In this document: positions 3,001 through 39,089 of the stretch, one piece after another
How positions within the stretch are numbered: the stretch's first letter is position 1
Layout of the letters: every line of letters begins with the position of its first letter
Source: Paramoeba atlantica
Lineage: Eukaryota; Protista; Discosea
DNA: 64,000 bases
Assembly (NCBI GenBank): GCA_977017575.1
Contig: CDRNVI010000004.1
Location: 372,001 to 436,000, forward strand
Reading direction: 5' to 3'
Notes under the pieces: model-generated
What the model saw: only the letters and a program-made list of their open reading frames with translations
Told to the model about the DNA's origin: nothing
Database searches by the model: none
Position numbers and translations under genes: made by a program

Positions 3001-4194
3001 CTTAACAAAAAGATGGTCTTAACAAAAAGATGGTCTTAACAAAAAGATGGTCTTAACAAAAAGATGGTCTTAACAAAAAGATGGTCTTAACAAAAAGATG
3101 GTCTTAACAAAAAGATGGTCTTAACAAAAAGATGGTCTTAACAAAAAGATGGTCTTAACAAAAAGATGGTCTTAACAAAAAGATGGTCTTAACAAAAAGA
3201 TGGTCTTAACAAAAAGATGGTCTTAACAAAAAGATGGTCTTAACAAAAAGATGGTCTTAACAAAAAGATGGTCTTAACAAAAAGATGGTCTTAACAAAAA
3301 GATGGTCTTAACAAAAAGATGGTCTTAACAAAAAGATGGTCTTAACAAAAAGATGGTCTTAACAAAAAGATGGTCTTAACAAAAAGATGGTCTTAACAAA
3401 AAGATGGTCTTAACAAAAAGATGGTCTTAACAAAAAGATGGTCTTAACAAAAAGATGGTCTTAACAAAAAGATGGTCTTAACAAAAAGATGGTCTTAACA
3501 AAAAGATGGTCTTAACAAAAAGATGGTCTTAACAAAAAGATGGTCTTAACAAAAAGATGGTCTTAACAAAAAGATGGTCTTAACAAAAAGATGGTCTTAA
3601 CAAAAAGATGGTCTTAACAAAAAGATGGTCTTAACAAAAAGATGGTCTTAACAAAAAGATGGTCTTAACAAAAAGATGGTCTTAACAAAAAGATGGTCTT
3701 AACAAAAAGATGGTCTTAACAAAAAGATGGTCTTAACAAAAGATGGTCTTAACAAAAAGATGGTCTTAACAAAAAGATGGTCTTAACAAAAAGATGGTCT
3801 TAACAAAAAGATGGTCTTAACAAAAAGATGGTCTTAACAAAAAGATGGTCTTAACAAAAAGATGGTCTTAACAAAAAGATGGTCTTAACAAAAAGATGGT
3901 CTTAACAAAAAGATGGTCTTAACAAAAAGATGGTCTTAACAAAAAGATGGTCTTAACAAAAAGATGGTCTTAACAAAAAGATGGTCTTAACAAAAAGATG
4001 GTCTTAACAAAAAGATGGTCTTAACAAAAAGATGGTCTTAACAAAAAGATGGTCTTAACAAAAAGATGGTCTTAACAAAAAGATGGTCTTAACAAAAAGA
4101 TGGTCTTAACAAAAAGATGGTCTTAACAAAAGATGGTCTTAACAAAAAGATGGTCTTAACAAAAGATGGTCTTAACAAAAAGATGGTCTTAACA
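1..4194. repeat. 17-bp tandem array (AAAAAGATGGTCTTAAC)n, about 247 units; runs off the window start
   Basis: Direct reading. The only variants seen are three single-A deletions near 3738, 4128 and 4161. Confidence 0.99.
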
Positions 4195-4858
4195 GAATTG
4201 CTCATCAGAATATAATTTTAATAAACAAATAATTAATTTGTAATCACTAAATATAATTTATCAAATACGAGGCACCCAAATACCTGTGTTTTGAACGTTA
4301 CTATAAATAAAATTATTTGATGAATATAGTACTAAAGGACGTCCTTATAAAAACAATCTTCACCTCTCTCTCTCTTGCGAATGGGTAGTTCCCCGGCGGG
4401 GAGTGGTTCGGGGGATGGCGGGTGGGGCAACTTTCCTTTTGCGAAAATAGAGAAAAGCTACTAGTGTAATAATAAAGTATAGTACTGTATAATTGATAAT
4501 CTACAAATATACATGGTTCCCCCCAGAGGGGGCAATGTCACACTGAAATCAGATCATAATATTAAATATCATGTGCCCCGTAGGGCCACGGTCAGATCTC
4601 ATACAGAATCAAAAGTATCTTCTTTGATCAATTCTTTCCGTAAACTATAAGAATTGCTCATCAGAATATAATTTTAATAAACAAATAATTAATTTGTAAT
4701 CACTAAATATAATTTATCAAATACGAGGCACCCAAATACCTGTGTTTTGAACGTTACTATAAATAAAATTATTTGATGAATATAGTACTAAAGGACGTCC
4801 TTATAAAAACAATCTTCACCTCTCTCTCTCTTGCGAATGGGTAGTTCCCCGGCGGGGA
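4195..4858 (-). repeat. B2-spacer-A2-B1 terminal repeat block of YR-1
   Basis: 208-bp B duplicated at 4195-4402 and 4651-4858; 224-bp A at 4427-4650 matches 8981-9204. Confidence 0.97.
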
Positions 4859-5049
4859 CCACCCACTCGCCAGTTCTCACAATCACCCACACGCTAGTAA
4901 TGTGGCGAAACCCCCAGGTCGCCTACTACCTGAGAGCCCCCCTCATCACCTCGTACTCTCACTCACACATTGCCCAATCCTCACATCAACATACATCCCA
5001 TACATATCAAAATCGCTCGAATATCCGTTCTTCCTGGTTATTGATTGTA

Positions 5050-7872: not shown

Positions 7873-8984
7873 AGCATTCCCGGTCTTCGGTATGGCGCAG
7901 GCGCGCGAGCTGGTGTGACGTGCGGAGTAAAATAACGCTGCGATCCTTGAGGTACATACGTGGCGTATGCTCGAGATAAACGTTTTTCTCTTTCGGCCAG
8001 CTGATCACTCACGTGGTGGTAAAATTTATCGTTGGGACGCACGTCTTTTTGCATTTTCTCATGTACTAGCTCCACGTCCACGCGACGCGCACGCCAGTAC
8101 GCGTCACGTAGCGATTGGATAATTGCTCGGCCCATCTCAAGAAAAGTACTCTGGTTCCACCCGGGCGTTTGTCGAGCCAGAATAATCCACTTGCAGAAAA
8201 TTCCATTAAAATTACGCTCTTGCTGTTTTACGAAAGTACGATCTTGGAAGTACTGGTTAACTCGTAATCCAAACTCAGGTGCATCACGCAGTTCACGTAT
8301 TAAATCCCTCGTTCGAAACCCACCCTCATCGAGAGACATAATCCACGGCTCAAATGTAATGGGCTCATAGGGATCCAGGGCGTTCGGGTCGAGAACCAAC
8401 GGGGATGCATCTGTCGAAAATATCACTTCCGCAGGTTCCTCATTAACACGAGTTTCATCGAGCGCGTTCATTTGCCGTACAGGTCGGCGCCCTTGTGTCG
8501 GTAACATCGCAGAGGGTACAGTTGGTTGAGTTCCTGGCGTGGTCGAAGGTTGTGTCGGATCTCCTGCTGTCTGTGGCCCCCCCTGGGCTGTCCCTCCCCT
8601 CGTCTCGGTCTGTGGAACCTCCCCTGGAAAATGGTGGATTTTTACCTGATAATAATTCAGTTCCGCATGAGGAAAAGGATACTCTTTCGTGGGTTCATCT
8701 TCCCACACGGCCCATAACTCCAAACCTTCCTGACGAACTTTTCCGTACACTGCTTTTATTGATTCATTGGGCTCGTCCTTGCGGCGAAAAAAAGCTTGCA
8801 CTGACACCGCCGGCTTGTCGGCCGGTGCCAAAAGAAGTCTCTCCCGGATCACTGCACATACATTGGTCAGATCGTGCGTCGTAAGCGGCTCGGTAGGCGC
8901 GAGCGGCTCCGTCACAGGAGAGGAACGTCGGGAGCTCCGTAAGCTCCGCGTCGAAGGATTCATAGTTGCGAGTTCTGATCGCAA
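7770..8984 (-). CDS. YR-1 Gag-like protein (TTG at 8984 or ATG at 8963)
   Basis: C-terminal CCHC knuckle CFGCRSPDHVWKNC; homologous to the other two gag ORFs in the window (RELIRELRDAP, YW motifs). Confidence 0.9.
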   Translation of the reverse strand: MRSELATMNPSTRSLRSSRRSSPVTEPLAPTEPLTTHDLTNVCAVIRERLLLAPADKPAVSVQAFFRRKDEPNESIKAVYGKVRQEGLELWAVWEDEPTKEYPFPHAELNYYQVKIHHFPGEVPQTETRGGTAQGGPQTAGDPTQPSTTPGTQPTVPSAMLPTQGRRPVRQMNALDETRVNEEPAEVIFSTDASPLVLDPNALDPYEPITFEPWIMSLDEGGFRTRDLIRELRDAPEFGLRVNQYFQDRTFVKQQERNFNGIFCKWIILARQTPGWNQSTFLEMGRAIIQSLRDAYWRARRVDVELVHEKMQKDVRPNDKFYHHVSDQLAEREKRLSRAYATYVPQGSQRYFTPHVTPARAPAPYRRPGMLCFGCRSPDHVWKNCPKRDFRSRVAGPAGSSKSL

Positions 8985-9204
8985 CTTTCCTTTTGCGAAA
9001 ATAGAGAAAAGCTACTAGTGTAATAATAAAGTATAGTACTGTATAATTGATAATCTACAAATATACATGGTTCCCCCCAGAGGGGGCAATTTCACACTGA
9101 AATCAGATCATAATATTAAATATCATGTGCCCCGTAGGGCCACGGTCAGATCTCATACAGAATCAAAAGTATCTTCTTTGATCAATTCTTTCCGTAAACT
9201 ATAA

Positions 9205-12200
9205 AAAAGATGGTCTTAACAAAAAGATGGTCTTAACAAAAAGATGGTCTTAACAAAAAGATGGTCTTAACAAAAAGATGGTCTTAACAAAAAGATGGTC
9301 TTAACAAAAAGATGGTCTTAACAAAAAGATGGTCTTAACAAAAAGATGGTCTTAACAAAAAGATGGTCTTAACAAAAAGATGGTCTTAACAAAAAGATGG
9401 TCTTAACAAAAAGATGGTCTTAACAAAAAGATGGTCTTAACAAAAAGATGGTCTTAACAAAAAGATGGTCTTAACAAAAAGATGGTCTTAACAAAAAGAT
9501 GGTCTTAACAAAAAGATGGTCTTAACAAAAAGATGGTCTTAACAAAAAGATGGTCTTAACAAAAAGATGGTCTTAACAAAAAGATGGTCTTAACAAAAAG
9601 ATGGTCTTAACAAAAAGATGGTCTTAACAAAAAGATGGTCTTAACAAAAAGATGGTCTTAACAAAAAGATGGTCTTAACAAAAAGATGGTCTTAACAAAA
9701 AGATGGTCTTAACAAAAAGATGGTCTTAACAAAAAGATGGTCTTAACAAAAAGATGGTCTTAACAAAAAGATGGTCTTAACAAAAAGATGGTCTTAACAA
9801 AAAGATGGTCTTAACAAAAAGATGGTCTTAACAAAAAGATGGTCTTAACAAAAAGATGGTCTTAACAAAAAGATGGTCTTAACAAAAAGATGGTCTTAAC
9901 AAAAAGATGGTCTTAACAAAAAGATGGTCTTAACAAAAAGATGGTCTTAACAAAAAGATGGTCTTAACAAAAAGATGGTCTTAACAAAAAGATGGTCTTA
10001 ACAAAAAGATGGTCTTAACAAAAAGATGGTCTTAACAAAAAGATGGTCTTAACAAAAAGATGGTCTTAACAAAAAGATGGTCTTAACAAAAAGATGGTCT
10101 TAACAAAAAGATGGTCTTAACAAAAAGATGGTCTTAACAAAAAGATGGTCTTAACAAAAAGATGGTCTTAACAAAAAGATGGTCTTAACAAAAAGATGGT
10201 CTTAACAAAAAGATGGTCTTAACAAAAAGATGGTCTTAACAAAAAGATGGTCTTAACAAAAAGATGGTCTTAACAAAAAGATGGTCTTAACAAAAAGATG
10301 GTCTTAACAAAAAGATGGTCTTAACAAAAAGATGGTCTTAACAAAAAGATGGTCTTAACAAAAAGATGGTCTTAACAAAAAGATGGTCTTAACAAAAAGA
10401 TGGTCTTAACAAAAAGATGGTCTTAACAAAAAGATGGTCTTAACAAAAAGATGGTCTTAACAAAAAGATGGTCTTAACAAAAAGATGGTCTTAACAAAAA
10501 GATGGTCTTAACAAAAAGATGGTCTTAACAAAAAGATGGTCTTAACAAAAAGATGGTCTTAACAAAAAGATGGTCTTAACAAAAAGATGGTCTTAACAAA
10601 AAGATGGTCTTAACAAAAAGATGGTCTTAACAAAAAGATGGTCTTAACAAAAAGATGGTCTTAACAAAAAGATGGTCTTAACAAAAAGATGGTCTTAACA
10701 AAAAGATGGTCTTAACAAAAAGATGGTCTTAACAAAAAGATGGTCTTAACAAAAAGATGGTCTTAACAAAAAGATGGTCTTAACAAAAAGATGGTCTTAA
10801 CAAAAAGATGGTCTTAACAAAAAGATGGTCTTAACAAAAAGATGGTCTTAACAAAAAGATGGTCTTAACAAAAAGATGGTCTTAACAAAAAGATGGTCTT
10901 AACAAAAAGATGGTCTTAACAAAAAGATGGTCTTAACAAAAAGATGGTCTTAACAAAAAGATGGTCTTAACAAAAAGATGGTCTTAACAAAAAGATGGTC
11001 TTAACAAAAAGATGGTCTTAACAAAAAGATGGTCTTAACAAAAAGATGGTCTTAACAAAAAGATGGTCTTAACAAAAAGATGGTCTTAACAAAAAGATGG
11101 TCTTAACAAAAAGATGGTCTTAACAAAAAGATGGTCTTAACAAAAAGATGGTCTTAACAAAAAGATGGTCTTAACAAAAAGATGGTCTTAACAAAAAGAT
11201 GGTCTTAACAAAAAGATGGTCTTAACAAAAAGATGGTCTTAACAAAAAGATGGTCTTAACAAAAAGATGGTCTTAACAAAAAGATGGTCTTAACAAAAAG
11301 ATGGTCTTAACAAAAAGATGGTCTTAACAAAAAGATGGTCTTAACAAAAAGATGGTCTTAACAAAAAGATGGTCTTAACAAAAAGATGGTCTTAACAAAA
11401 AGATGGTCTTAACAAAAAGATGGTCTTAACAAAAAGATGGTCTTAACAAAAAGATGGTCTTAACAAAAAGATGGTCTTAACAAAAAGATGGTCTTAACAA
11501 AAAGATGGTCTTAACAAAAAGATGGTCTTAACAAAAAGATGGTCTTAACAAAAAGATGGTCTTAACAAAAAGATGGTCTTAACAAAAAGATGGTCTTAAC
11601 AAAAAGATGGTCTTAACAAAAAGATGGTCTTAACAAAAAGATGGTCTTAACAAAAAGATGGTCTTAACAAAAAGATGGTCTTAACAAAAAGATGGTCTTA
11701 ACAAAAAGATGGTCTTAACAAAAAGATGGTCTTAACAAAAAGATGGTCTTAACAAAAAGATGGTCTTAACAAAAAGATGGTCTTAACAAAAAGATGGTCT
11801 TAACAAAAAGATGGTCTTAACAAAAAGATGGTCTTAACAAAAAGATGGTCTTAACAAAAAGATGGTCTTAACAAAAAGATGGTCTTAACAAAAAGATGGT
11901 CTTAACAAAAAGATGGTCTTAACAAAAAGATGGTCTTAACAAAAAGATGGTCTTAACAAAAAGATGGTCTTAACAAAAAGATGGTCTTAACAAAAAGATG
12001 GTCTTAACAAAAAGATGGTCTTAACAAAAAGATGGTCTTAACAAAAAGATGGTCTTAACAAAAAGATGGTCTTAACAAAAAGATGGTCTTAACAAAAAGA
12101 TGGTCTTAACAAAAAGATGGTCTTAACAAAAAGATGGTCTTAACAAAAAGATGGTCTTAACAAAAAGATGGTCTTAACAAAAAGATGGTCTTAACAAAAA

Positions 12201-15200
12201 GATGGTCTTAACAAAAAGATGGTCTTAACAAAAAGATGGTCTTAACAAAAAGATGGTCTTAACAAAAAGATGGTCTTAACAAAAAGATGGTCTTAACAAA
12301 AAGATGGTCTTAACAAAAAGATGGTCTTAACAAAAAGATGGTCTTAACAAAAAGATGGTCTTAACAAAAAGATGGTCTTAACAAAAAGATGGTCTTAACA
12401 AAAAGATGGTCTTAACAAAAAGATGGTCTTAACAAAAAGATGGTCTTAACAAAAAGATGGTCTTAACAAAAAGATGGTCTTAACAAAAAGATGGTCTTAA
12501 CAAAAAGATGGTCTTAACAAAAAGATGGTCTTAACAAAAAGATGGTCTTAACAAAAAGATGGTCTTAACAAAAAGATGGTCTTAACAAAAAGATGGTCTT
12601 AACAAAAAGATGGTCTTAACAAAAAGATGGTCTTAACAAAAAGATGGTCTTAACAAAAAGATGGTCTTAACAAAAAGATGGTCTTAACAAAAAGATGGTC
12701 TTAACAAAAAGATGGTCTTAACAAAAAGATGGTCTTAACAAAAAGATGGTCTTAACAAAAAGATGGTCTTAACAAAAAGATGGTCTTAACAAAAAGATGG
12801 TCTTAACAAAAAGATGGTCTTAACAAAAAGATGGTCTTAACAAAAAGATGGTCTTAACAAAAAGATGGTCTTAACAAAAAGATGGTCTTAACAAAAAGAT
12901 GGTCTTAACAAAAAGATGGTCTTAACAAAAAGATGGTCTTAACAAAAAGATGGTCTTAACAAAAAGATGGTCTTAACAAAAAGATGGTCTTAACAAAAAG
13001 ATGGTCTTAACAAAAAGATGGTCTTAACAAAAAGATGGTCTTAACAAAAAGATGGTCTTAACAAAAAGATGGTCTTAACAAAAAGATGGTCTTAACAAAA
13101 AGATGGTCTTAACAAAAAGATGGTCTTAACAAAAAGATGGTCTTAACAAAAAGATGGTCTTAACAAAAAGATGGTCTTAACAAAAAGATGGTCTTAACAA
13201 AAAGATGGTCTTAACAAAAAGATGGTCTTAACAAAAAGATGGTCTTAACAAAAAGATGGTCTTAACAAAAAGATGGTCTTAACAAAAAGATGGTCTTAAC
13301 AAAAAGATGGTCTTAACAAAAAGATGGTCTTAACAAAAAGATGGTCTTAACAAAAAGATGGTCTTAACAAAAAGATGGTCTTAACAAAAAGATGGTCTTA
13401 ACAAAAAGATGGTCTTAACAAAAAGATGGTCTTAACAAAAAGATGGTCTTAACAAAAAGATGGTCTTAACAAAAAGATGGTCTTAACAAAAAGATGGTCT
13501 TAACAAAAAGATGGTCTTAACAAAAAGATGGTCTTAACAAAAAGATGGTCTTAACAAAAAGATGGTCTTAACAAAAAGATGGTCTTAACAAAAAGATGGT
13601 CTTAACAAAAAGATGGTCTTAACAAAAAGATGGTCTTAACAAAAAGATGGTCTTAACAAAAAGATGGTCTTAACAAAAAGATGGTCTTAACAAAAAGATG
13701 GTCTTAACAAAAAGATGGTCTTAACAAAAAGATGGTCTTAACAAAAAGATGGTCTTAACAAAAAGATGGTCTTAACAAAAAGATGGTCTTAACAAAAAGA
13801 TGGTCTTAACAAAAAGATGGTCTTAACAAAAAGATGGTCTTAACAAAAAGATGGTCTTAACAAAAAGATGGTCTTAACAAAAAGATGGTCTTAACAAAAA
13901 GATGGTCTTAACAAAAAGATGGTCTTAACAAAAAGATGGTCTTAACAAAAAGATGGTCTTAACAAAAAGATGGTCTTAACAAAAAGATGGTCTTAACAAA
14001 AAGATGGTCTTAACAAAAAGATGGTCTTAACAAAAAGATGGTCTTAACAAAAAGATGGTCTTAACAAAAAGATGGTCTTAACAAAAAGATGGTCTTAACA
14101 AAAAGATGGTCTTAACAAAAAGATGGTCTTAACAAAAAGATGGTCTTAACAAAAAGATGGTCTTAACAAAAAGATGGTCTTAACAAAAAGATGGTCTTAA
14201 CAAAAAGATGGTCTTAACAAAAAGATGGTCTTAACAAAAAGATGGTCTTAACAAAAAGATGGTCTTAACAAAAAGATGGTCTTAACAAAAAGATGGTCTT
14301 AACAAAAAGATGGTCTTAACAAAAAGATGGTCTTAACAAAAAGATGGTCTTAACAAAAAGATGGTCTTAACAAAAAGATGGTCTTAACAAAAAGATGGTC
14401 TTAACAAAAAGATGGTCTTAACAAAAAGATGGTCTTAACAAAAAGATGGTCTTAACAAAAAGATGGTCTTAACAAAAAGATGGTCTTAACAAAAAGATGG
14501 TCTTAACAAAAAGATGGTCTTAACAAAAAGATGGTCTTAACAAAAAGATGGTCTTAACAAAAAGATGGTCTTAACAAAAAGATGGTCTTAACAAAAAGAT
14601 GGTCTTAACAAAAAGATGGTCTTAACAAAAAGATGGTCTTAACAAAAAGATGGTCTTAACAAAAAGATGGTCTTAACAAAAAGATGGTCTTAACAAAAAG
14701 ATGGTCTTAACAAAAAGATGGTCTTAACAAAAAGATGGTCTTAACAAAAAGATGGTCTTAACAAAAAGATGGTCTTAACAAAAAGATGGTCTTAACAAAA
14801 AGATGGTCTTAACAAAAAGATGGTCTTAACAAAAAGATGGTCTTAACAAAAAGATGGTCTTAACAAAAAGATGGTCTTAACAAAAAGATGGTCTTAACAA
14901 AAAGATGGTCTTAACAAAAAGATGGTCTTAACAAAAAGATGGTCTTAACAAAAAGATGGTCTTAACAAAAAGATGGTCTTAACAAAAAGATGGTCTTAAC
15001 AAAAAGATGGTCTTAACAAAAAGATGGTCTTAACAAAAAGATGGTCTTAACAAAAAGATGGTCTTAACAAAAAGATGGTCTTAACAAAAAGATGGTCTTA
15101 ACAAAAAGATGGTCTTAACAAAAAGATGGTCTTAACAAAAAGATGGTCTTAACAAAAAGATGGTCTTAACAAAAAGATGGTCTTAACAAAAAGATGGTCT

Positions 15201-18200
15201 TAACAAAAAGATGGTCTTAACAAAAAGATGGTCTTAACAAAAAGATGGTCTTAACAAAAAGATGGTCTTAACAAAAAGATGGTCTTAACAAAAAGATGGT
15301 CTTAACAAAAAGATGGTCTTAACAAAAAGATGGTCTTAACAAAAAGATGGTCTTAACAAAAAGATGGTCTTAACAAAAAGATGGTCTTAACAAAAAGATG
15401 GTCTTAACAAAAAGATGGTCTTAACAAAAAGATGGTCTTAACAAAAAGATGGTCTTAACAAAAAGATGGTCTTAACAAAAAGATGGTCTTAACAAAAAGA
15501 TGGTCTTAACAAAAAGATGGTCTTAACAAAAAGATGGTCTTAACAAAAAGATGGTCTTAACAAAAAGATGGTCTTAACAAAAAGATGGTCTTAACAAAAA
15601 GATGGTCTTAACAAAAAGATGGTCTTAACAAAAAGATGGTCTTAACAAAAAGATGGTCTTAACAAAAAGATGGTCTTAACAAAAAGATGGTCTTAACAAA
15701 AAGATGGTCTTAACAAAAAGATGGTCTTAACAAAAAGATGGTCTTAACAAAAAGATGGTCTTAACAAAAAGATGGTCTTAACAAAAAGATGGTCTTAACA
15801 AAAAGATGGTCTTAACAAAAAGATGGTCTTAACAAAAAGATGGTCTTAACAAAAAGATGGTCTTAACAAAAAGATGGTCTTAACAAAAAGATGGTCTTAA
15901 CAAAAAGATGGTCTTAACAAAAAGATGGTCTTAACAAAAAGATGGTCTTAACAAAAAGATGGTCTTAACAAAAAGATGGTCTTAACAAAAAGATGGTCTT
16001 AACAAAAAGATGGTCTTAACAAAAAGATGGTCTTAACAAAAAGATGGTCTTAACAAAAAGATGGTCTTAACAAAAAGATGGTCTTAACAAAAAGATGGTC
16101 TTAACAAAAAGATGGTCTTAACAAAAAGATGGTCTTAACAAAAAGATGGTCTTAACAAAAAGATGGTCTTAACAAAAAGATGGTCTTAACAAAAAGATGG
16201 TCTTAACAAAAAGATGGTCTTAACAAAAAGATGGTCTTAACAAAAAGATGGTCTTAACAAAAAGATGGTCTTAACAAAAAGATGGTCTTAACAAAAAGAT
16301 GGTCTTAACAAAAAGATGGTCTTAACAAAAAGATGGTCTTAACAAAAAGATGGTCTTAACAAAAAGATGGTCTTAACAAAAAGATGGTCTTAACAAAAAG
16401 ATGGTCTTAACAAAAAGATGGTCTTAACAAAAAGATGGTCTTAACAAAAAGATGGTCTTAACAAAAAGATGGTCTTAACAAAAAGATGGTCTTAACAAAA
16501 AGATGGTCTTAACAAAAAGATGGTCTTAACAAAAAGATGGTCTTAACAAAAAGATGGTCTTAACAAAAAGATGGTCTTAACAAAAAGATGGTCTTAACAA
16601 AAAGATGGTCTTAACAAAAAGATGGTCTTAACAAAAAGATGGTCTTAACAAAAAGATGGTCTTAACAAAAAGATGGTCTTAACAAAAAGATGGTCTTAAC
16701 AAAAAGATGGTCTTAACAAAAAGATGGTCTTAACAAAAAGATGGTCTTAACAAAAAGATGGTCTTAACAAAAAGATGGTCTTAACAAAAAGATGGTCTTA
16801 ACAAAAAGATGGTCTTAACAAAAAGATGGTCTTAACAAAAAGATGGTCTTAACAAAAAGATGGTCTTAACAAAAAGATGGTCTTAACAAAAAGATGGTCT
16901 TAACAAAAAGATGGTCTTAACAAAAAGATGGTCTTAACAAAAAGATGGTCTTAACAAAAAGATGGTCTTAACAAAAAGATGGTCTTAACAAAAAGATGGT
17001 CTTAACAAAAAGATGGTCTTAACAAAAAGATGGTCTTAACAAAAAGATGGTCTTAACAAAAAGATGGTCTTAACAAAAAGATGGTCTTAACAAAAAGATG
17101 GTCTTAACAAAAAGATGGTCTTAACAAAAAGATGGTCTTAACAAAAAGATGGTCTTAACAAAAAGATGGTCTTAACAAAAAGATGGTCTTAACAAAAAGA
17201 TGGTCTTAACAAAAAGATGGTCTTAACAAAAAGATGGTCTTAACAAAAAGATGGTCTTAACAAAAAGATGGTCTTAACAAAAAGATGGTCTTAACAAAAA
17301 GATGGTCTTAACAAAAAGATGGTCTTAACAAAAAGATGGTCTTAACAAAAAGATGGTCTTAACAAAAAGATGGTCTTAACAAAAAGATGGTCTTAACAAA
17401 AAGATGGTCTTAACAAAAAGATGGTCTTAACAAAAAGATGGTCTTAACAAAAAGATGGTCTTAACAAAAAGATGGTCTTAACAAAAAGATGGTCTTAACA
17501 AAAAGATGGTCTTAACAAAAAGATGGTCTTAACAAAAAGATGGTCTTAACAAAAAGATGGTCTTAACAAAAAGATGGTCTTAACAAAAAGATGGTCTTAA
17601 CAAAAAGATGGTCTTAACAAAAAGATGGTCTTAACAAAAAGATGGTCTTAACAAAAAGATGGTCTTAACAAAAAGATGGTCTTAACAAAAAGATGGTCTT
17701 AACAAAAAGATGGTCTTAACAAAAAGATGGTCTTAACAAAAAGATGGTCTTAACAAAAAGATGGTCTTAACAAAAAGATGGTCTTAACAAAAAGATGGTC
17801 TTAACAAAAAGATGGTCTTAACAAAAAGATGGTCTTAACAAAAAGATGGTCTTAACAAAAAGATGGTCTTAACAAAAAGATGGTCTTAACAAAAAGATGG
17901 TCTTAACAAAAAGATGGTCTTAACAAAAAGATGGTCTTAACAAAAAGATGGTCTTAACAAAAAGATGGTCTTAACAAAAAGATGGTCTTAACAAAAAGAT
18001 GGTCTTAACAAAAAGATGGTCTTAACAAAAAGATGGTCTTAACAAAAAGATGGTCTTAACAAAAAGATGGTCTTAACAAAAAGATGGTCTTAACAAAAAG
18101 ATGGTCTTAACAAAAAGATGGTCTTAACAAAAAGATGGTCTTAACAAAAAGATGGTCTTAACAAAAAGATGGTCTTAACAAAAAGATGGTCTTAACAAAA

Positions 18201-19871
18201 AGATGGTCTTAACAAAAAGATGGTCTTAACAAAAAGATGGTCTTAACAAAAAGATGGTCTTAACAAAAAGATGGTCTTAACAAAAAGATGGTCTTAACAA
18301 AAAGATGGTCTTAACAAAAAGATGGTCTTAACAAAAAGATGGTCTTAACAAAAAGATGGTCTTAACAAAAAGATGGTCTTAACAAAAAGATGGTCTTAAC
18401 AAAAAGATGGTCTTAACAAAAAGATGGTCTTAACAAAAAGATGGTCTTAACAAAAAGATGGTCTTAACAAAAAGATGGTCTTAACAAAAAGATGGTCTTA
18501 ACAAAAAGATGGTCTTAACAAAAAGATGGTCTTAACAAAAAGATGGTCTTAACAAAAAGATGGTCTTAACAAAAAGATGGTCTTAACAAAAAGATGGTCT
18601 TAACAAAAAGATGGTCTTAACAAAAAGATGGTCTTAACAAAAAGATGGTCTTAACAAAAAGATGGTCTTAACAAAAAGATGGTCTTAACAAAAAGATGGT
18701 CTTAACAAAAAGATGGTCTTAACAAAAAGATGGTCTTAACAAAAAGATGGTCTTAACAAAAAGATGGTCTTAACAAAAAGATGGTCTTAACAAAAAGATG
18801 GTCTTAACAAAAAGATGGTCTTAACAAAAAGATGGTCTTAACAAAAAGATGGTCTTAACAAAAAGATGGTCTTAACAAAAAGATGGTCTTAACAAAAAGA
18901 TGGTCTTAACAAAAAGATGGTCTTAACAAAAAGATGGTCTTAACAAAAAGATGGTCTTAACAAAAAGATGGTCTTAACAAAAAGATGGTCTTAACAAAAA
19001 GATGGTCTTAACAAAAAGATGGTCTTAACAAAAAGATGGTCTTAACAAAAAGATGGTCTTAACAAAAAGATGGTCTTAACAAAAAGATGGTCTTAACAAA
19101 AAGATGGTCTTAACAAAAAGATGGTCTTAACAAAAAGATGGTCTTAACAAAAAGATGGTCTTAACAAAAAGATGGTCTTAACAAAAAGATGGTCTTAACA
19201 GAAAGATGGTCTTAACAAAAAGATGGTCTTAACAAAAAGATGGTCTTAACAAAAAGATGGTCTTAACAAAAAGATGGTCTTAACAAAAAGATGGTCTTAA
19301 CAAAAAGATGGTCTTAACAAAAAGATGGTCTTAACAAAAAGATGGTCTTAACAAAAAGATGGTCTTAACAAAAAGATGGTCTTAACAAAAAGATGGTCTT
19401 AACAAAAAGATGGTCTTAACAAAAAGATGGTCTTAACAAAAAGATGGTCTTAACAAAAAGATGGTCTTAACAAAAAGATGGTCTTAACAAAAAGATGGTC
19501 TTAACAAAAAGATGGTCTTAACAAAAAGATGGTCTTAACAAAAAGATGGTCTTAACAAAAAGATGGTCTTAACAAAAAGATGGTCTTAACAAAAAGATGG
19601 TCTTAACAAAAAGATGGTCTTAACAAAAAGATGGTCTTAACAAAAAGATGGTCTTAACAAAAAGATGGTCTTAACAAAAAGATGGTCTTAACAAAAAGAT
19701 GGTCTTAACAAAAAGATGGTCTTAACAAAAAGATGGTCTTAACAAAAAGATGGTCTTAACAAAAAGATGGTCTTAACAAAAAGATGGTCTTAACAAAAAG
19801 ATGGTCATTAACAAAAAGATGGTCTTAACAAAAAGATGGTCTTAACAAAAAGATGGTCTTAACAAAAAGAT
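9205..19871. repeat. 17-bp tandem array (AAAAAGATGGTCTTAAC)n, about 627 units
   Basis: Direct reading. The only variants seen are A>G at 19201 and a 1-nt insertion at 19807. Confidence 0.99.
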
Positions 19872-21037
19872 CTAGTCAAAGTACAGAAACGGACAATTCT
19901 TGCACCCCCCGTCAACGTGCCTTGAGCGACGCAATCTCGGCGCACGAATTTTCATGTGCGTACGCAGCGGCAGACAGTAGCACTCGCGCGAGGTACACCT
20001 CTCAGACTGGAGATGGGGCCAGCAGCTGGGCATTTTGCATCCCATCAACAGAGCTTGGCCACGCTTACACACCCACAGAATTCCGCGCCCTCTCCAGGTG
20101 GTGGTTAGGTGCCAAGGTCTACAACGAGTTGAGCACGTGCCCAATTAACACATGCCAACAACCTCTCGACCTCGAAGGAAACCATGCTGTGTCTTGCAAA
20201 AGTGGGAATGGACTGATCTCCCGCCACAATGCGCTCATTACACAATTCACCGACACGTGCTCCAAGGCGAATTTATCACCTTCACGTGAGGTAAGCCTGG
20301 GGAACCTAGGGCCTGGCGGCTGTCCCACGAGGCCGGGCGATGTCTTTATTCCGGGCTATGAGAAAGCTCAAGGTCTGGTGCTTGATTTTGCTGTCACCCA
20401 CGTTCAGCAACCTAAATACACGGACTTAGTCCGCAACGCTAACGGGGTGGCGGCAGGATCATTTGCGGAGCACTACGCCGCTTCTCACAAGGTGAAAGAG
20501 AGAGAGGAGGCGGAACAAGCAAAACATGTGTTTGTTGCCATGGTGGTAGAATCATATGGTGCTTGGAGTGCAAGTGCCCTATCAATCCTTAGATGGGTTG
20601 GGAAGCATCGCGCCTCATGTTCCCAGGGGACTCTATCTCAAGAAGCAGCTACCCGTCAGCTGCTTCAAGAGCTTAACCTCACCCTGATGCGTTCTCAATC
20701 GAGAATGCTTGTCTCACGCATGCCTGGCTGAAGATCCACAACCGGCACTTATTTTGCAGTAGCCTAAACCAAGGCTCGCGGATCCCGGCATGTTCGAAGG
20801 CTGAGGGTGCTGGTCTCGTCGACAGAGTCTATACTCACGCCTAGTCCGTCAGGGCTAGGTACCCCAAGTGAGGTAGTACACGGGTAGTGAATCTCCTCCC
20901 CGTCGGCCAGCATCCTGTTTCGCGACCGTGTCGCTGTCGACACAGGCCCGCGCCTGCGCCCTCCCGTATAACAAGGGAAGGGTCCACAAGTCAGGCCGTG
21001 GAGAGGTCGAAAGACCCGGTCCGGAACGCGCGAATGG
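19872..21037 (+). mobile_element. 5'-truncated CRE-like RLE non-LTR retrotransposon (family A'): endonuclease region 19872-20731 plus conserved 3' UTR
   Basis: CCHC knuckle CPINTC...HAVSC, RHNAL, RPGDV and LDFAVTH; homologous to the C-terminus of the 22364 ORF. Confidence 0.9.
20805..21037 (+). other. Conserved structured 3' UTR segment of family A' (second copy at 26335-26568)
   Basis: About 10 differences in about 220 nt between the two copies by eye; stems show compensatory changes. Confidence 0.7.
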
Positions 21038-21283: not shown

Positions 21284-21315
<32 letters not shown>

Positions 21316-32891: not shown

Positions 32892-33321
32892 TTGATTCTT
32901 CAACGAACTGTAATTCTGAAGGACTTTTTTGTTTTTTAGCTTTGGCAAGAGCAGTTTTCCACTTTGCTGACCCAATTTTTTCGTATTCTATGAGCGGTTC
33001 AAGTTCACGTCGCAATTTTTCTGTCAGACGATACCAGTGTTCACGGTCTGACGCAAATACCAATGCCTCTTCCAGTGTAATGTTAAGATCCTTGAAGCAA
33101 GCCTCGCTTGGAGATAAATTGCGTGCATTCGGGCGTTGTTTCCACTGTACAAGCTCTTGAAAATCACTGGAGTGCCTCAGCATGTGCCCGACGAGCTTGG
33201 CCCTCTGAACCTTGTGTATAGTAGAAAAGCGCTCAGTTTCAAGATACAGAGAAGCATTCGGGTAGCTCATTCCGTATTCATCTAATCTGTTGCATTGGCA
33301 AACTATTCTTCTCATGTTGTT
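32892..33321 (-). pseudogene. Post-RT region, piece 3 of the split APE-RT-RNH element
   Basis: MRRIV, RAKLVGHMLRH and ASDREHW; joins in frame to both neighbouring pieces. Confidence 0.8.
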
Positions 33322-33362
33322 GCCCCTGTTTGTTTATTTATTTTATTAATCTTTTATTCGAA

Positions 33363-33516
33363 ATGGGCATGCTAACGCGTGCCAAGGCGAAGGACACGGG
33401 GGTAGCTCCCGTTGTCCAATCGCTTCCCACGACGCGACGGAAAAAGAAAGAGATGCCGACGTTGCCGCCAATACCACCAGCGCCACCCGAAGATTCACCA
33501 CCACGGCCGCCGCCGC

Positions 33517-33547
<31 letters not shown>

Positions 33548-36500
33548 GCCGCCACCGCCACCAAAACAGCCACCATCGCCAACGTCGCCCCCACAATCAG
33601 AGCTTCTACCACTACAATCACCACCGCCACCACCACCGCCACTACAAACACAAGTGTCACACTCACCACGTGTAGCGGTACGAGCCGAAGAAGTAGAGGT
33701 ACCTATCGACGACATTGTTCTTCGACCTTTGAATCCCACTGCGCGGATACTCTCCGACGAAGAGATTTTCCTAAAGAGGAAGGAACGCAAACAAATGCGC
33801 TGGGAATTCCATGAGGCACTGCGACAGAAAAAGGATAAGGCTAAGAATTCGGTGGAGGAGGCTCCGAATCAAAGCTCCGAAACAGCTTCTGAAACGTGCA
33901 CCGGGTCGATTCCCCCGCGAGTGGGCCCCCCGTCAACTGCAGGAAACAAATGCTCTGTAACAATCAAAAGCGCTAACCTATTGTCAACAGGCCTGCTGTC
34001 CAGCTTGTTCAGTCGCCGCAAGGAAATAACCGGCTCAATCGATACCCGCCCAACCGAGTTGCCCACAAGGAATCTGTACAACGAAGAAGGCGGAGAAACG
34101 AGAACAAGCATTTCGCGGAATAACCAGCGGAAGAAAAGATTTTGTTTTCCGCCAGAAGGGTCAGCAGACACAATTTTGTGTGGATCGCGCTTTGGAGCCA
34201 GGAAGTCGTGCGAGGCTGTCGGCTATCCGAACGGCGGCTTCTCGAATCTTGTCCCGCTGGGAGGTGCAGAATGGCATCGGAGAGATGAAAATCATAGTGA
34301 CGAATCGGAAGACCGTGCAGAGGCTGTAGGTGAAGGTAAAAACCAAACGCTCCAAGAAAGAAACAACCCGGAATCACCGACGAATGAGCAGCGCATTTAC
34401 CACGATTGTATATCAACACCGCGTTCAACACCTCGATACGAATCGCCCGATCCGATCGATGCGCTACCCGATTGCGTGAGTGAACAAGGAAACGTAGACG
34501 ATAACTCGACGACCCAGGCCAACTTTGCGGAAGAAATGCTCGCCGAGATCAACCCGACTACCCAATTCCCTATTCCCCCTGACATCATCTGGAAAATGGC
34601 ATGCAAAAGCAAGGTAGGTCAGCGCTGCGTCGTTGCTTGGACTTTCGATCGACAAACGGCTATTAACATATCACAAGGAATCGTCACCAAGACTAAAGTA
34701 AGAAAGGGATCAGGACAAGTTAATCTGGAATACGAAGGGATACATGGACACTGTCGAGGGAAAAAGTACAATGGAACCTTACCACCGCCACCTAATGTAC
34801 GAATTTTCCGTTTAGTGTGGGAAGGTGAAAATGAAACATCGGATGAACCAGTATTTCATGCAAGCAATGCCAGCCACACGCAAGAAGACCTTGACTTTGA
34901 ACCACTTCCCACGACAAAAACCATTGAAACCGAATTCATTCCATGTGTCATTTCAATTTTCAGAGACCTCATACGTGAATACGCGGATAGTCCGCAAAAG
35001 CTCAAAAACCAGATATGGCATAAGTTGCTATCGGCAGTCAAGTTCTCATTGGCGACCGTACGGGCCGAATCAGAAAGAAGACGCAGGAATCGCCCTTTTC
35101 GATCACGCAACGATACCAACAAGACCCACGAAGAAAACGGTGACAATCGAGCCATTAAGAAAGCAATGCGGCTAGTAAAGGAGGGTGCGACATCCAGGGC
35201 TACTAAAATTTTAGACCGGGAAATGATCACAACAAGTGCGTCAGATCAGGAAATTCTGGAAAAATTGGAGAAACTACATCCAAAGCATCCTTGCACCTTC
35301 ACGTTGCCACCCGATGCGCCGGCAATGGCTTGCATATCGCCCGAGGAACTTCGACTTGCTGGTCGCCGGTTGGCCAAAGGTTCATCTCCAGGTCCGACCG
35401 GGATGAATGACGTCATTCTCCGCCTGCTAATCGACGACGAAATATGCTGCAGAAGCTTGTGCCACATGCTAGTGGATCTGGTCAACGGGGTGCTGCCTAC
35501 CGACATTATGCGACGATTGAAAAGAGCTCGATTGGTGGCTATTCCAAAGCCAAATGGAGGAGTTCGTCCAATCGCCATAGGAGAAACACTACTAAAACTC
35601 GCTGAACTCGTCCTATTACTTCGACACGAATCATCGCTCGCTACCTTATTCCAGCCCCTTCAACAAGGAGTGTTATCCAAATCCGGTTGTGAAAGCGTAA
35701 TACATAATCTCAGTGATCTATATGAGCAAGGCCACGTCATTTTATCGCTCGACTTTCGCAACGCATTCAACGTTCCATCCCGTGACGAAATAGCAAAAGC
35801 AGTCTTTGGTTTCGCCACAATGAAGCCCTTTCAAAGAGTGTTTGCGGCGCAATACAAAGAAGCCTCAGAACTTCTTTTTTACGGACATACCGGTACATTG
35901 TACAGCGTACTTGAGAGCAATGCAGGTGTTCGTCAAGGCTCCCCACTGTCGACGGTTTTCTTTTGCTGCTTTCTGCAACCCATGTTGGAGACCATAGCGC
36001 AGGAATTTCCAAACGTCAAAGTTCTAGCTTACGTCGACGACGTCAGCCTCACTTCTCCTAGTGGAAAAGAGGTCGAGGCGGCATACCACCGGTTACAAAC
36101 CCTGCTTCTCACTGAAGGAATTCAACTCAATAACGAAAAATGCATCTGGTTTGAAGGGAAAAGCGACGCCCCCATTCCATCAACACTCAAAGAAGAAGGT
36201 GTGCGTACAGAGAGCGAAGTCATTAAAGTACTGGGTGCATTCGTTGGGGAGGAACAGCGCATAGGATCCGAATTAATCCGAACGCTGGAAAAACACCATA
36301 CGATATTCAGACGTCTTAAAAAGATGGGTGCCAACAACGCGTCCCTGCTTTTGCTATCGCGCAGCGTAAACGTTCGGCACCGTTATCACGTACGGGTACA
36401 TAAACTAGAGGCCTCACTTGAGCTAGCGCAAAAATTTGACCACGAGATCAAGAATGTCGTCACATCGTGGTTGGGACCTCTGAGTCCAGAGCAAGAAATG

Positions 36501-37547
36501 ATAGCAAGACTACCTTTAAAGAAAGGTGGATTGGGTATTCCAGCAACAGAACCCTTGCGGAACGCTGCGTACACTTCATCGCGACATGCCGTTTTTGAGC
36601 ATCAAAAAACCTTTTCAGCTCGGATGGCACAACGCATGGAACCGCCAGCACCTGCAGGGACGTTGGAGGAATCACATAAGACACCTGAGGACGAGGTGGT
36701 GACGGAGACCAAAAGAGCCACAGAAATCCAGACAAATCTTCTCAAAAACAAGGAGTGGGCTCCGACGATTAAAGCTTGCAGCAAGAAAGGGAGCTATGAA
36801 TGGCTTATCGGGAATCGCAAAATCATTCCTTCGCACATCTACACGCTAAACATCATGTCACGACTAAAAATAAGCCACCCACAACTGCCAAACTCGTTGC
36901 TATGCCCGGGATGCAAAAAGCTGCTAAGCTCCTCGGAAGCGCTAACCCACATACCTGGATGCGTCAAATGTGCAGGACACAATGTAACTACGAAGCATCA
37001 TGCCCTTGTTCGCTACCTTTACGAGCTATGCCTCCGAGCTGGCTTGCCGTGTGAACGTGAACCTCGTCAGTTCAGTTACTATGAGTGCTCTGCGTGCGCA
37101 GCCACGATCCACCCTGAAAACAAAACGGAACATACCAGGACATGTGTTGGAAGTACTCTGCGTCGCACGGGCCCCGACCTTGCAATTCAATGGGCTTCAG
37201 GAGAGAAATACTACGACCTCACAGTAGTTCACGAACTGGCTCCCTCGAATATCAAACACAATACGACATTCCTCATGAACGAAGCGATAAAGCGCAAGCG
37301 TGTACGCTATGTTGACAGTGGCATGATAAACAAGGAATGCTTTGAATGTATCCCTGTTCTGTCCTGCGGTTCCATGCACAACGCCACTCGAAATCTCCTG
37401 TGGGCTATTGCGGACCGTTGCGGGCTAGAGAGACACAGCGTAATGGAAACATTTACGCTACTCCACCAGGAACAGGCAGGAAGTATCCTCCACGCTCAAC
37501 TCCGCCAGTTTCTAGCTCACGACCAATACACTGAGACAAGTTTTTAA
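33363..37547 (+). CDS. Family B polyprotein: Pro-rich N-terminus, RT, CCHC knuckle and RLE (about 1394 aa from the first ATG)
   Basis: RLVAIPKPNGGVRPIAIGE, LDFRNAFN, GVRQGSPLS, YVDD; CPGC..HIPGC, GPDLAI, YYDLTVVH. Confidence 0.95.
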
Positions 37548-37703
37548 GCTTGTCATCTCAAATACTTCTTAAGAAAAGAAAGGGATATTAGTTTATTAGA
37601 ATGTGAACATTTGATAGTAATCGGCGCGTATATAATATATGCGCTCCACGGGCTTTTGTTAAGACCTTTGTTTTTGTTAAGACGGGCCACCGTCACCTCG
37701 AGA

Positions 37704-37836
37704 TTTGTTTAATACCCCCTTTTTATTTAATACCCCCTTTTTGTTTAATACCCCCTTTTTGTTTAATACCCCCTTTTTTGTTTAATACCCCCTTTTTGTT
37801 TAATACCCCCTTTTTGTTTAATACCCCCTTTTTGTT
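37704..37836 (+). repeat. Seven 18-bp units (GTTTAATACCCCCTTTTT) at the 3' end of family B
   Basis: AATACCCCC recurs at 37711, 37729, 37747, 37765, 37784, 37802 and 37820. Confidence 0.95.
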
Positions 37837-39089
37837 AACTTCAACGTCAATTCTTCGGAGCATGGATTTTGAAATAGAAAGTGCACCTATCCCAAAGTTT
37901 AGCACCGGATATACTATTGAATCGTAGAGGCGCAGCTTAGTCTCCGGGCTAAGTGGTGAAGACCAAATACCATTCATTCGAAAGAGAGATCCCCAAGCTA
38001 GTTTCAATCGATCTTTAACTGTAGATGTAAAATCATTTTCCTGCCGATGCCCTAAGTGTTTGTAAGACGTAACTTTCGGAATCATCCCAGAGAATTTGCT
38101 GTTCAAGCTCTCGCTGCTCATTTGAGATTTACCAAAAGTTAACCAGGCTGTCTTGTTTGCTCCGACGGCTAGTTTCAGATTAGCTTTGCGTGACTCTTCA
38201 GCTACATTGTCTATCATATTTGTCAAACCACTCTTCGTGTCACTAAATAACGCTATATCGTCCGCATACTCAATGTCACTCAGGCGCTTTTCATGAAGAC
38301 CCCGCTTTCTTGTACCCCTAGAGCTGAGAAGAACCCCGTCTGATTTTCCATCTAGTGCTTTATTGAGAATTCTATCTAACACCATAACGAACAGATAAGG
38401 CGCCAATACATCACCTTGAAGTATTCCTGTAGTGATAGGGAAAGGTTTTGTGATTCCAATAGAAGTTCGTACAGTGCCTTTCAGCTCATCGTATATAGAC
38501 ATTATCATCTTAGAAAGACATGAACCTACTCGAAATGCATGCAAACTAGCTTTAATAGCAGCGAACGATACCGAAGGAAATGCTTTAGCAAAGTCTATAA
38601 AAGCTACAGAAAGGCCTTGTCCTCTGAATGCTTTGGTTTTTATTTCGTTCATGATAATCTGAGCTCCAGAAGTCGCTCGGTTAGGTCGAAACCCATACTG
38701 GTTACCCCGAAGAGACTTTTCAATGTTGGGTCTAATGCGGGAGAGTATCATATGATTCATGAGCTTAACTACGCTATTTACTACGCATATAGGCCGCCAA
38801 TTCTCAATGTTAGTGAGGTCTCCTTTCTTTGGGATGGGTATTTGAAGAGTGTTGCGCCAGGCTTCCTCTGTGACTCCCGTTTCGTGTACCTGGTTGATTA
38901 TATTCAGGAGATGCGATCTCAGATCAGGGTGGACCGCTATAGCTTGAAGGGCTTCCATTGGTATTCCGTCACTTCCAGGTGTTTTTCCTCTTCTGAAATG
39001 TTCTAAAGATGTGCTTAACTCCTCGCTTGTAAATGCTGCATCGGATATTGGTACTAACGGCGGCGGCAGCAGTTCAAAGCTCGGGTTTG
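37837..39089 (-). pseudogene. RT domain (RTE-like), piece 2 of the split APE-RT-RNH element
   Basis: GKTPGSDGIP, NWRPICV, QYGFRPNR, FIDFAKAF, GILQGDVLAPYLF and EYADDIAL. Confidence 0.92.

What the first reader, a model, noticed from the sequence alone, without database searches (positions are those of the whole stretch)
33322..37836. CRE-like element whose 3' end and target site resemble the giant repeat
Seen: family B ends not in polyA but in seven 18-mers. Their complement AAAAAGGGGGTATTAAAC aligns at 14 of 18 positions with AAAAAGATGGTCTTAAC. Its 3' UTR holds two exact 13-nt matches to the array's minus strand (TTTTGTTAAGACC and TTTTTGTTAAGAC, about 37655-37683). The reconstructed empty site contains TTGTTAA, as in the array. 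Repeat polarity outward from unique DNA matches the big array. Established: SART/TRAS elements target telomeric repeats, and SART1 3' UTR repeat-like sequence aids priming. Inference: family B either targets the array or generates it by reiterative 3'-end copying, which would link a retrotransposon to terminal-array maintenance.
Basis: partly seen in the sequence, partly recalled or inferred. Interest (0 to 1): 0.8.

Follow-up and report, generated by a model that had tools for sequence, protein, structure and literature searches.

The report
Retrotransposon copy carrying borrowed satellite tail
An intact jumping gene of a trypanosome-like protist landed inside another jumping gene and brought along seven units of an 18-base satellite; the satellite resembles the element's own tail region, but the element neither builds nor maintains chromosome ends.

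Summary
The sequence facts hold for this copy. A 4,515-bp insertion (33322-37836) splits another retroelement exactly at CATGTTGTT|AACTTC. It consists of a 1,394-aa RT plus restriction-like-endonuclease ORF, a 156-nt 3' UTR and 7.3 T-rich 18-mers. The 18-mer is related to the giant 17-mer (14/18), and the UTR holds the only two 13-mer matches to that array outside the arrays.

The tail is not a family trait. Of 16 independent 3' junctions elsewhere, none has it. Several end in poly(A). Thirteen break inside a 14-nt zone of the T-rich UTR unit.

The tail's unit type is not encoded in the element; it otherwise occurs only in arrays on two other contigs. A second copy pair carries 3.6 units of a different array type. 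No copy sits inside an array. The giant array is internal to its contig, and the genome has ordinary TTTAGGG ends.

Best reading (about 0.6): the tail was copied from pre-existing T-rich array RNA during the retrotransposition that made this copy. That RNA was either a read-through flank (3' transduction) or a template-jump partner, primed by TTGTT microhomology.

The link between this element and the array family is real. Array building and end maintenance are not supported. Other agents of this scan have described the array family on other DNA.

The parts
33317..33321 (.). Left copy of TTGTT at the target site. It is either a 5-bp target duplication or microhomology with the last five bases of the tail.
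   Evidence: The empty site CATGTTGTT|AACTTC is seen in at least 10 uninterrupted host copies; loose end at 37832.
33322..33362 (+). 5' UTR of family B, without a spliced leader in this copy. The first roughly 12 nt differ from the other full-length copies.
   Evidence: other 5' ends start at query position 113-120; in L089 a B copy is preceded by the spliced-leader 3' part CTGTACCTTGTTGAA.
33363..37547 (+). Intact single ORF of 1,394 aa with a proline-rich N-terminus, RT domain and C-terminal restriction-like endonuclease.
35541..36233 (+). Reverse transcriptase domain (aa 727-957, YVDD at aa 890).
   Evidence: RVT_1, E = 8e-22; best solved relative is the R2 protein, E = 3.5e-8..
36903..37313 (+). 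Restriction-like endonuclease: CPGC...H...C knuckle, KHH, E.EPR, an extra CxxC...H...C knuckle, GPD, x12, D.T, RK..YV.
   Evidence: The motifs are invariant in 8 families at about 50% identity. The pattern is as given in PMC12857005.
37548..37703 (+). 3' UTR of the alpha subfamily.
37567..37584 (+). Array-family unit in A-rich orientation, 17/18 identical to the unit of a 60-copy array in L013. It pairs with 37654-37665 as an 11-bp stem.
37607..37654 (+). 48-nt hairpin module, 100% identical to the 3' end of a different RLE family (P0004, 51% protein identity), where T plus poly(A) follows it.
37654..37683 (+). 1.7 T-rich array-family units holding the two 13-mers. This is the zone where 13 of 16 independent B 3' junctions break.
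37684..37703 (+). 20-nt terminal segment specific to the alpha subfamily. It occurs only three times in the genome, each time followed by different DNA.
37704..37836 (+). Tail of 7.3 T-rich 18-mers of the AATACCCCC type, with two variant units. It lies inside the insertion and was not templated by B's own UTR.
37837..38958 (-). Host retroelement (minus-strand RT gene) resuming exactly one base after the tail. Its other half ends at 33321.
9204..19871 (+). Context: the giant 17-mer array (also 1-4194), in A-rich orientation. It abuts the 5' end of a plus-strand element that ends in poly(A) at 21315. It is internal to contig C4.

Best explanation
Family B is a young, probably active non-LTR retrotransposon of the R2-like kind, with a single ORF encoding RT and a restriction-like endonuclease. 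Its host is a spliced-leader protist. This copy was made by target-primed reverse transcription at a TTGTT|AAC site inside another retroelement. The RNA that was copied ended in about 130 nt of a pre-existing T-rich 18-mer satellite. There are two ways this could have arisen. Either the satellite was co-transcribed with a mother copy lying beside such an array (3' transduction, about 0.35), or the RT first copied a separate T-rich array RNA and then jumped to the 3' end of the B RNA (about 0.3). In both cases priming used pairing between UUGUU in the last unit and the nicked target. B's own 3' UTR contains diverged units of the same satellite family, and these act as its usual, imprecise priming zone. 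Shown: the exact insertion, the empty site, the foreign unit type, the copy-specific tail and the breakpoint cluster. Inferred: the RNA intermediate, and which of the two routes was taken.
For: Exact insertion with the tail inside it and TTGTT at both edges. The tail's unit type is absent from B. Exact dimers of it occur elsewhere only in arrays on C5 and C27. None of 16 other independent B junctions has the tail. Three subfamilies share their own 15-40-nt extensions beyond the breakpoint zone, so B RNAs do run past the element's core end and pass flank sequence on. A second copy pair (L018/L019) carries 3.6 units that are identical to giant arrays on C40, on its 3' side only. The two tail variants contrast with 0 differences in the adjacent 404 nt shared with L002 and L003, which fits a heterogeneous array as template. 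Chimeric 3' ends are common here: a 48-nt module is shared at 100% with a family only 51% identical in protein, and there are poly(A)-to-spliced-leader joints. Template jumping by R2 RT, L1 3' transduction and internal initiation at repeat-like UTR sequence are documented (PMC8857657, PMC7265360).
Against: No B copy beside a long array of the tail's type exists in this assembly, and the tail's variant unit is unique in the genome, so no source was found. No RNA data show T-rich array transcripts or read-through B transcripts. Reads could not confirm contiguity.
Confidence: 0.62

Rival explanations
1. Array first, element second. A short T-rich 18-mer block had already been inserted at TTGTT|AAC in this host copy, and B then integrated at its left edge because its endonuclease or priming prefers TTGTT-type sites of the array family. 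In this reading B targets array units.
For: B's complete alpha 3' end (to 37703) abuts the tail just as it abuts unrelated DNA in L002 and L003. Array-family repeats lie within 1.5 kb downstream of 6 of 16 B junctions, against 1 of 32 control loci, Fisher p = 0.004. The target and each array unit share TTGTT followed by A/T.
Against: B would have had to choose the first of about 8 equivalent sites. No B copy lies within any long array, although these offer thousands of sites. This reading still needs a retrocopy of array RNA to explain the block.
Confidence: 0.12
2. The tail was made de novo. The RT of B, or of a LINE acting in trans, repeatedly re-copied one 18-nt template at the start of cDNA synthesis, in a telomerase-like stutter.
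For: The number of B's own UTR units varies: 1.7 in most copies, 2.1-2.4 in L004/5 and L007/8. Other agents of this scan report reiterated 17-19-nt heads on LINEs of this genome and suspect re-copying (s1-389390; untested here). RTE elements seed simple repeats by slippage (PMC2887409).
Against: The tail's unit is not present in B RNA. Only 1 of about 20 copies has it. The same unit type pre-exists as arrays of up to 49 units elsewhere.
Confidence: 0.07
3. The tail has a non-retrotransposition origin. Either array DNA was captured during repair or gene conversion at the junction, or the assembly is wrong at a repeat.
For: Contiguity rests on one long-read assembly. Short-read contigs break throughout 37655-37830.
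Against: The host sequence resumes at exactly the next base after the tail. The joints show the microhomology typical of target-primed insertion. An assembly chimera would not restore the host frame.
Confidence: 0.06
4. One reading: B maintains or builds a terminal array that serves as a non-canonical telomere.
For: Sequence kinship between UTR, tail, target and arrays. The T-rich strand points outward.
Against: The array is at C4:372001-391871, with B copies and other matches on both sides of it on the same contig. TTTAGGG x4 occurs 4,724 times and starts at base 21 of C138 in end orientation. The tail is bounded by the host element on its far side.
Confidence: 0.02

Closest known systems
R2 and other restriction-like-endonuclease (RLE) non-LTR retrotransposons
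   Same: A single ORF with RT followed by a CCHC knuckle and a PD..D nuclease. The 3' end is defined without an obligatory poly(A). 5'-truncated copies occur. The best solved relative is the R2 protein. R2 RT jumps between templates (PMC8857657).
   Different: It is not rDNA-specific. The RNA can carry the host spliced leader and poly(A). There is an extra zinc knuckle inside the nuclease. 3' ends are imprecise within a 14-nt zone.
CRE1/CRE2, SLACS, CZAR (RLE elements in spliced-leader RNA genes of trypanosomatids)
   Same: The host lineage uses a kinetoplastid-type spliced leader, and the architecture is RT plus RLE.
   Different: This copy is in another retroelement, not in a spliced-leader gene. 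Word-based protein search found no named CRE, SLACS or CZAR relative. Clade membership was not tested by a tree.
SART1Bm/TRAS1, telomere-repeat-specific LINEs of Bombyx
   Same: Repeat-like sequence in the 3' UTR can pair with the nicked target and start reverse transcription internally (PMC7265360). B's junctions cluster in its repeat-like unit.
   Different: Those are APE-type, poly(A)-dependent, and every copy lies in telomeric repeats. B is RLE-type and no copy lies in an array.
MoTeR/FoTeR/Cnl1, telomere-targeting relatives of the CRE group in fungi
   Same: RLE elements associated with short tandem repeats at their ends (PMC12857005).
   Different: Those sit in TTAGGG telomeres, and their repeats are mainly at the 5' end. 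B is interstitial, and its repeat is a one-off 3' tail.
L1 3' transduction, and SSR tails of RTE elements
   Same: Flanking or slippage-derived sequence is carried at the 3' end of daughter copies (PMC7265360 discussion; PMC2887409). B has subfamily-specific 3' extensions.
   Different: Here the carried sequence is a piece of an 18-nt satellite that is kin to the element's own UTR. Priming is by TTGTT microhomology rather than poly(A).

Membership tests
RLE-bearing non-LTR retrotransposons (R2-like) | Reverse transcriptase domain of the non-LTR type | tested here: met
   RVT_1 at aa 727-957, E = 8e-22. Best PDB match is the R2 protein.
RLE-bearing non-LTR retrotransposons (R2-like) | C-terminal CCHC motif followed by (R/K)H(D/N)...E...(R/K)PD...x12-14...D/E | tested here: met
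   CPGC-x11-H-x3-C, KHH, E.EPR, GPD-x12-D. All are invariant in 8 families. The spacing differs (x11 instead of x7-8) and there is an extra knuckle. The pattern is taken from PMC12857005.
RLE-bearing non-LTR retrotransposons (R2-like) | Hallmarks of target-primed insertion: variable 5' truncation, no LTRs, short or no target duplication | tested here: met
   About 20 3' ends but only 5 5' ends. Exact insertion with 0-5 bp of duplication.
CRE clade (CRE1/2, SLACS, CZAR) | RT phylogeny groups it with CRE, SLACS and CZAR | not tested
   No named reference sequences were obtainable. One search returned only unnamed relatives, and one search was uninformative.
CRE clade (CRE1/2, SLACS, CZAR) | Site-specific insertion in spliced-leader RNA genes | tested here: not met
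   The window copy is in the RT gene of another element. Other copies have varied flanks. One copy (L020) lies beside a 2.28-kb tandem repeat bearing the leader 25-mer, which was not resolved.
Telomere-repeat-specific retrotransposons (SART1/TRAS, MoTeR/FoTeR) | Copies inserted within the telomeric repeat at chromosome ends | tested here: not met
   No B copy is in an array. The arrays are contig-internal, and the telomere repeat is TTTAGGG.
Non-LTR elements with an intrinsic 3' tandem-repeat tail (e.g. RTE, I, CR1 types) | All or most copies end in the same short repeat | tested here: not met
   1 of 16 independent junctions has this tail. Others end in poly(A), (TAAA)n or unrelated sequence.
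3' transduction (as in L1) | The carried segment matches DNA flanking an identifiable source copy | tested here: inconclusive
   The unit type matches arrays on C5 and C27, but no B copy adjoins them and the variant unit is unique. Shared subfamily extensions do show read-through inheritance.

The most novel reading that the evidence does not exclude
The 17/18-nt units may be a shared priming and recognition module of a guild of retroelements in this protist. They appear in the 3' UTRs of the B lineage, including a relative at 48% identity whose UTR ends in two such units just before its poly(A). Other agents also report them as reiterated 5' heads of LINEs. In this reading, reverse transcription of T-rich array RNA primed at TTGTT sites is how pieces of these satellites are seeded at new loci. 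B would then act as a vector in RT-driven satellite dispersal and growth.
Probability: 0.15. Interest if true: 0.65.

Novelty: new variant of a known kind. Interest (0 to 1): 0.4.

Why it matters
The result removes a tempting but wrong telomere story: the genome has ordinary TTTAGGG ends, and the array is interstitial. What remains is a clean natural example of an R2-like element moving a piece of satellite DNA to a new locus. The exact empty site is known, and there is evidence that a satellite-like unit in the 3' UTR is where reverse transcription starts. If array RNA really is a frequent RT template here, this would help explain how 10-55-kb arrays of 17/18-mers of several unit types arose and spread in one small genome. 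It would also give a tractable system (an intact ORF, about 20 near-identical copies) for testing microhomology priming and template jumping by an RLE reverse transcriptase.

Tried and rejected
(1) Reads. The four holder runs are short-read Logan contigs from one study.
(2) Looking for the same junction in a second assembly through the exact 411-aa junction ORF gave nothing on record.
(3) Source array. The tail's variant units are absent from the C5 and C27 arrays I hold, and one is unique in the genome.
I did not try to read letters through patterns.
(5) Rfam found no family in 33000-38200, in the whole window, or beside the C5 arrays.
(6) The protein atlas and the word-based protein search gave only unnamed RT clusters, so there is no CRE-clade tree.
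(7) A 13-mer (GCGCTCCACGGGC) is shared by B's UTR and the DNA next to a C5 array. It is non-random but I could not explain it.
(8) TTAGGG x4 has only one hit, so the telomere repeat is TTTAGGG.
(9) The idea that the C5 arrays are heads of a coding LINE was not borne out: there is no long ORF within 1.2 kb.
Full report
WHAT IS THERE. The window is G000:C4:372001-436000 of a 45.7-Mb, 248-contig assembly. It is a pile of retroelements to the right of two blocks of a near-perfect 17-mer array, at 1-4194 and 9204-19871. The finding covers one plus-strand element with these parts:
- a 41-nt leader;
- an intact 1,394-aa ORF (33363-37547) with an RVT_1 domain at aa 727-957;
- a C-terminal restriction-like endonuclease (CPGC...H...C, KHH, E.EPR, GPD-x12-D) whose key residues are invariant in eight related families at about 50% identity;
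- a 156-nt 3' UTR;
- 7.3 copies of a T-rich 18-mer at 37704-37836.
The best solved relative is the R2 protein. The host organism uses a kinetoplastid-type spliced leader (core CAGTTTCTGTAC). DNA copies of this leader head hundreds of retrocopies, with 445 hits of a 25-mer. In a second assembly (ERZ24900291), a copy of this same element is preceded by the leader's 3' part.

THE OBSERVATION. In at least ten fetched loci of the minus-strand host element, the bases equivalent to 33321 and 37837 are adjacent and read CATGTTGTT|AACTTC. The insertion is therefore exactly 33322-37836, and the 18-mers arrived with it or into it. They are not host sequence. TTGTT occurs at the left flank and as the last five bases of the tail. 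This is either a 5-bp duplication or priming microhomology, and short-read contigs of the empty host site confirm the boundary. The 18-mer and the 17-mer align at 14 identities with one gap, and 1 of 300 shuffles did as well. The two 13-mers (37654, 37671) are the only ones shared with the array in 44 kb, against 0.02 expected. The statement that the family ends in 18-mers does not.

THE FAMILY. About 20 copies share the last 370-400 nt at 99-100% identity. Only five have a 5' end, as expected of target-primed insertion. After removing duplicated loci there are 16 independent 3' junctions besides this one, and none has this tail.
- Thirteen junctions diverge from the window sequence between 37670 and 37683, inside the T-rich unit. 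The binomial probability for a 14-nt zone of a 156-nt UTR is 1e-11.
- Three copies (this one, L002, L003) run on to 37703. That 20-nt end occurs only three times in the genome and is followed by three different sequences.
- Beyond the break, six loci share one 40-nt extension and two share another that ends in poly(A).
- Others continue into poly(A), (TAAA)n, or spliced-leader-headed retrocopies.
I draw two inferences. First, reverse transcription usually starts imprecisely within the U-rich unit, as SART1Bm does at repeat-like UTR sequence (PMC7265360). Second, B RNAs often run past the element's core end and hand flank sequence to daughter copies.

RELATION TO THE ARRAYS. The UTR contains array-family units in both orientations. 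The unit at 37567-37584 is 17/18 identical to the unit of a 60-copy array (L013). The unit at 37654-37671 is 16/18 identical to a unit that forms giant arrays on contig C40. The two pair as an 11-bp stem around a 48-nt hairpin module. That module is 100% identical to the 3' end of another RLE family whose protein is only 51% identical, and there it is followed by T plus poly(A). A relative at 48% identity ends its UTR in two TTTATTAAGAC units just before the poly(A). Another holds 3.4 copies of an 18-mer, and three others have no such units. The kinship is therefore real but is not a universal requirement of the lineage.

The tail's own unit type (AATACCCCC) is not in B. Exact dimers of it occur only here and in arrays of up to 49 units on C5 and C27, which are not next to any B copy. 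A second copy pair (L018/L019) has 3.6 units identical to the C40 arrays after its truncated UTR, on the 3' side only. Array-family repeats lie within 1.5 kb downstream of 6 of 16 B junctions, against 1 of 32 control loci. Even so, no B copy lies inside a long array.

NOT A CHROMOSOME END. The giant array lies at C4:372001-391871, with matches of several kinds on both sides of it on the same contig. It abuts the 5' end of a plus-strand element that ends in poly(A) at 21315. TTTAGGG x4 occurs 4,724 times, from base 21 of contig C138 in the orientation of a left end, whereas TTAGGG x4 occurs once. Other agents of this scan have concluded on other DNA that these arrays are reiterated 17-19-nt heads of LINEs and short elements (s1-389380, s1-389390, s1-369784). 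I used this only as a lead. In my loci the C5 arrays are not followed by a long ORF.

HOW IT MOST LIKELY AROSE. The tail was templated by pre-existing T-rich array RNA in the same retrotransposition event that made this copy (0.62). One route is read-through from a mother copy beside such an array. This is favoured by the subfamily extensions, but no mother copy was found and the tail's variant unit is unique. The other route is priming on free array RNA at the TTGTT nick, followed by a jump to the B RNA's 3' end. This is favoured by the many chimeric joints in this genome and by the known template jumping of R2 RT (PMC8857657). The rivals are:
- array block first, then B at its edge (0.12);
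- de novo stuttering by an RT (0.07);
- repair capture or misassembly (0.06);
- the telomere-maintenance reading (0.02).

LIMITS. Reads were available only as short contigs. There were no RNA data. The clade (CRE versus other RLE groups) was not tested.

Noticed in passing
L025-L030, L092:5130-5185; window 37607-37654: A 48-nt 3' hairpin module is 100% identical between family B and a different RLE family (P0004, 51% protein identity), where it is followed by T plus poly(A). This points to recent exchange of 3' ends between families.
   Followed up: partly
L085:9576-9588 (C5:18576-18588) and window 37641-37653: The 13-mer GCGCTCCACGGGC of B's UTR also sits directly after an A-rich AATACCCCC-type array on C5. 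It has 42 genome hits, nearly all in RLE 3' modules. The match is non-random and unexplained.
   Followed up: partly
G000:C21:280-11710 (coordinates only) and L020: The spliced-leader 25-mer recurs every ~2,283 bp six times on C21. A 5'-truncated B copy (C21:11776-12382) with a poly(A) end lies at the edge of this tandem repeat. It could be a leader gene array or a tandem retroelement.
   Followed up: no
window 4195-9203: A minus-strand element with long ORFs but no Pfam hit is inserted in the 17-mer array exactly between CTTAAC and AAAAAG.
   Followed up: no
L009:1200-1250 and L013:575-600 (oriented from the B anchor): Long 18-mer arrays abut spliced-leader sequence directly. In L009, 49 T-rich units run straight into a full leader heading a plus-strand element. 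In L013, an antisense partial leader touches a 60-unit A-rich array.
   Followed up: partly
window 37086-37160 (aa 1242-1266): An extra CxxC...H...C zinc knuckle is inserted between the E and PD motifs of the endonuclease. It is conserved in all eight related families.
   Followed up: partly
G000:C40:1008175-1019291 (coordinates only): Giant arrays of the unit TTTTTGTTAAGACCCTTC, with over 3,100 overlapping hits and a 9.4-kb gap (1009066-1018436) that may be an insertion inside the array.
   Followed up: no
window 19872-19905: Next to the 17-mer array, the plus-strand element begins with GTACAGAAAC, the reverse complement of the spliced-leader core. This may be chance or an antisense leader remnant.
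   Followed up: no
window 33480-33660: The N-terminus of the B protein is a proline run encoded by (GCC)n-type repeats. These give many weak DNA matches across the genome.
   Followed up: no
L009/L010 (C83:377149, C63:511051): Two B copies truncated at TTTTTGTTA continue into (TAAA)5-6 and a shared 130-nt segment, then diverge: one into poly(A), the other into a 49-unit array. This is a multi-part chimeric 3' end.
   Followed up: partly
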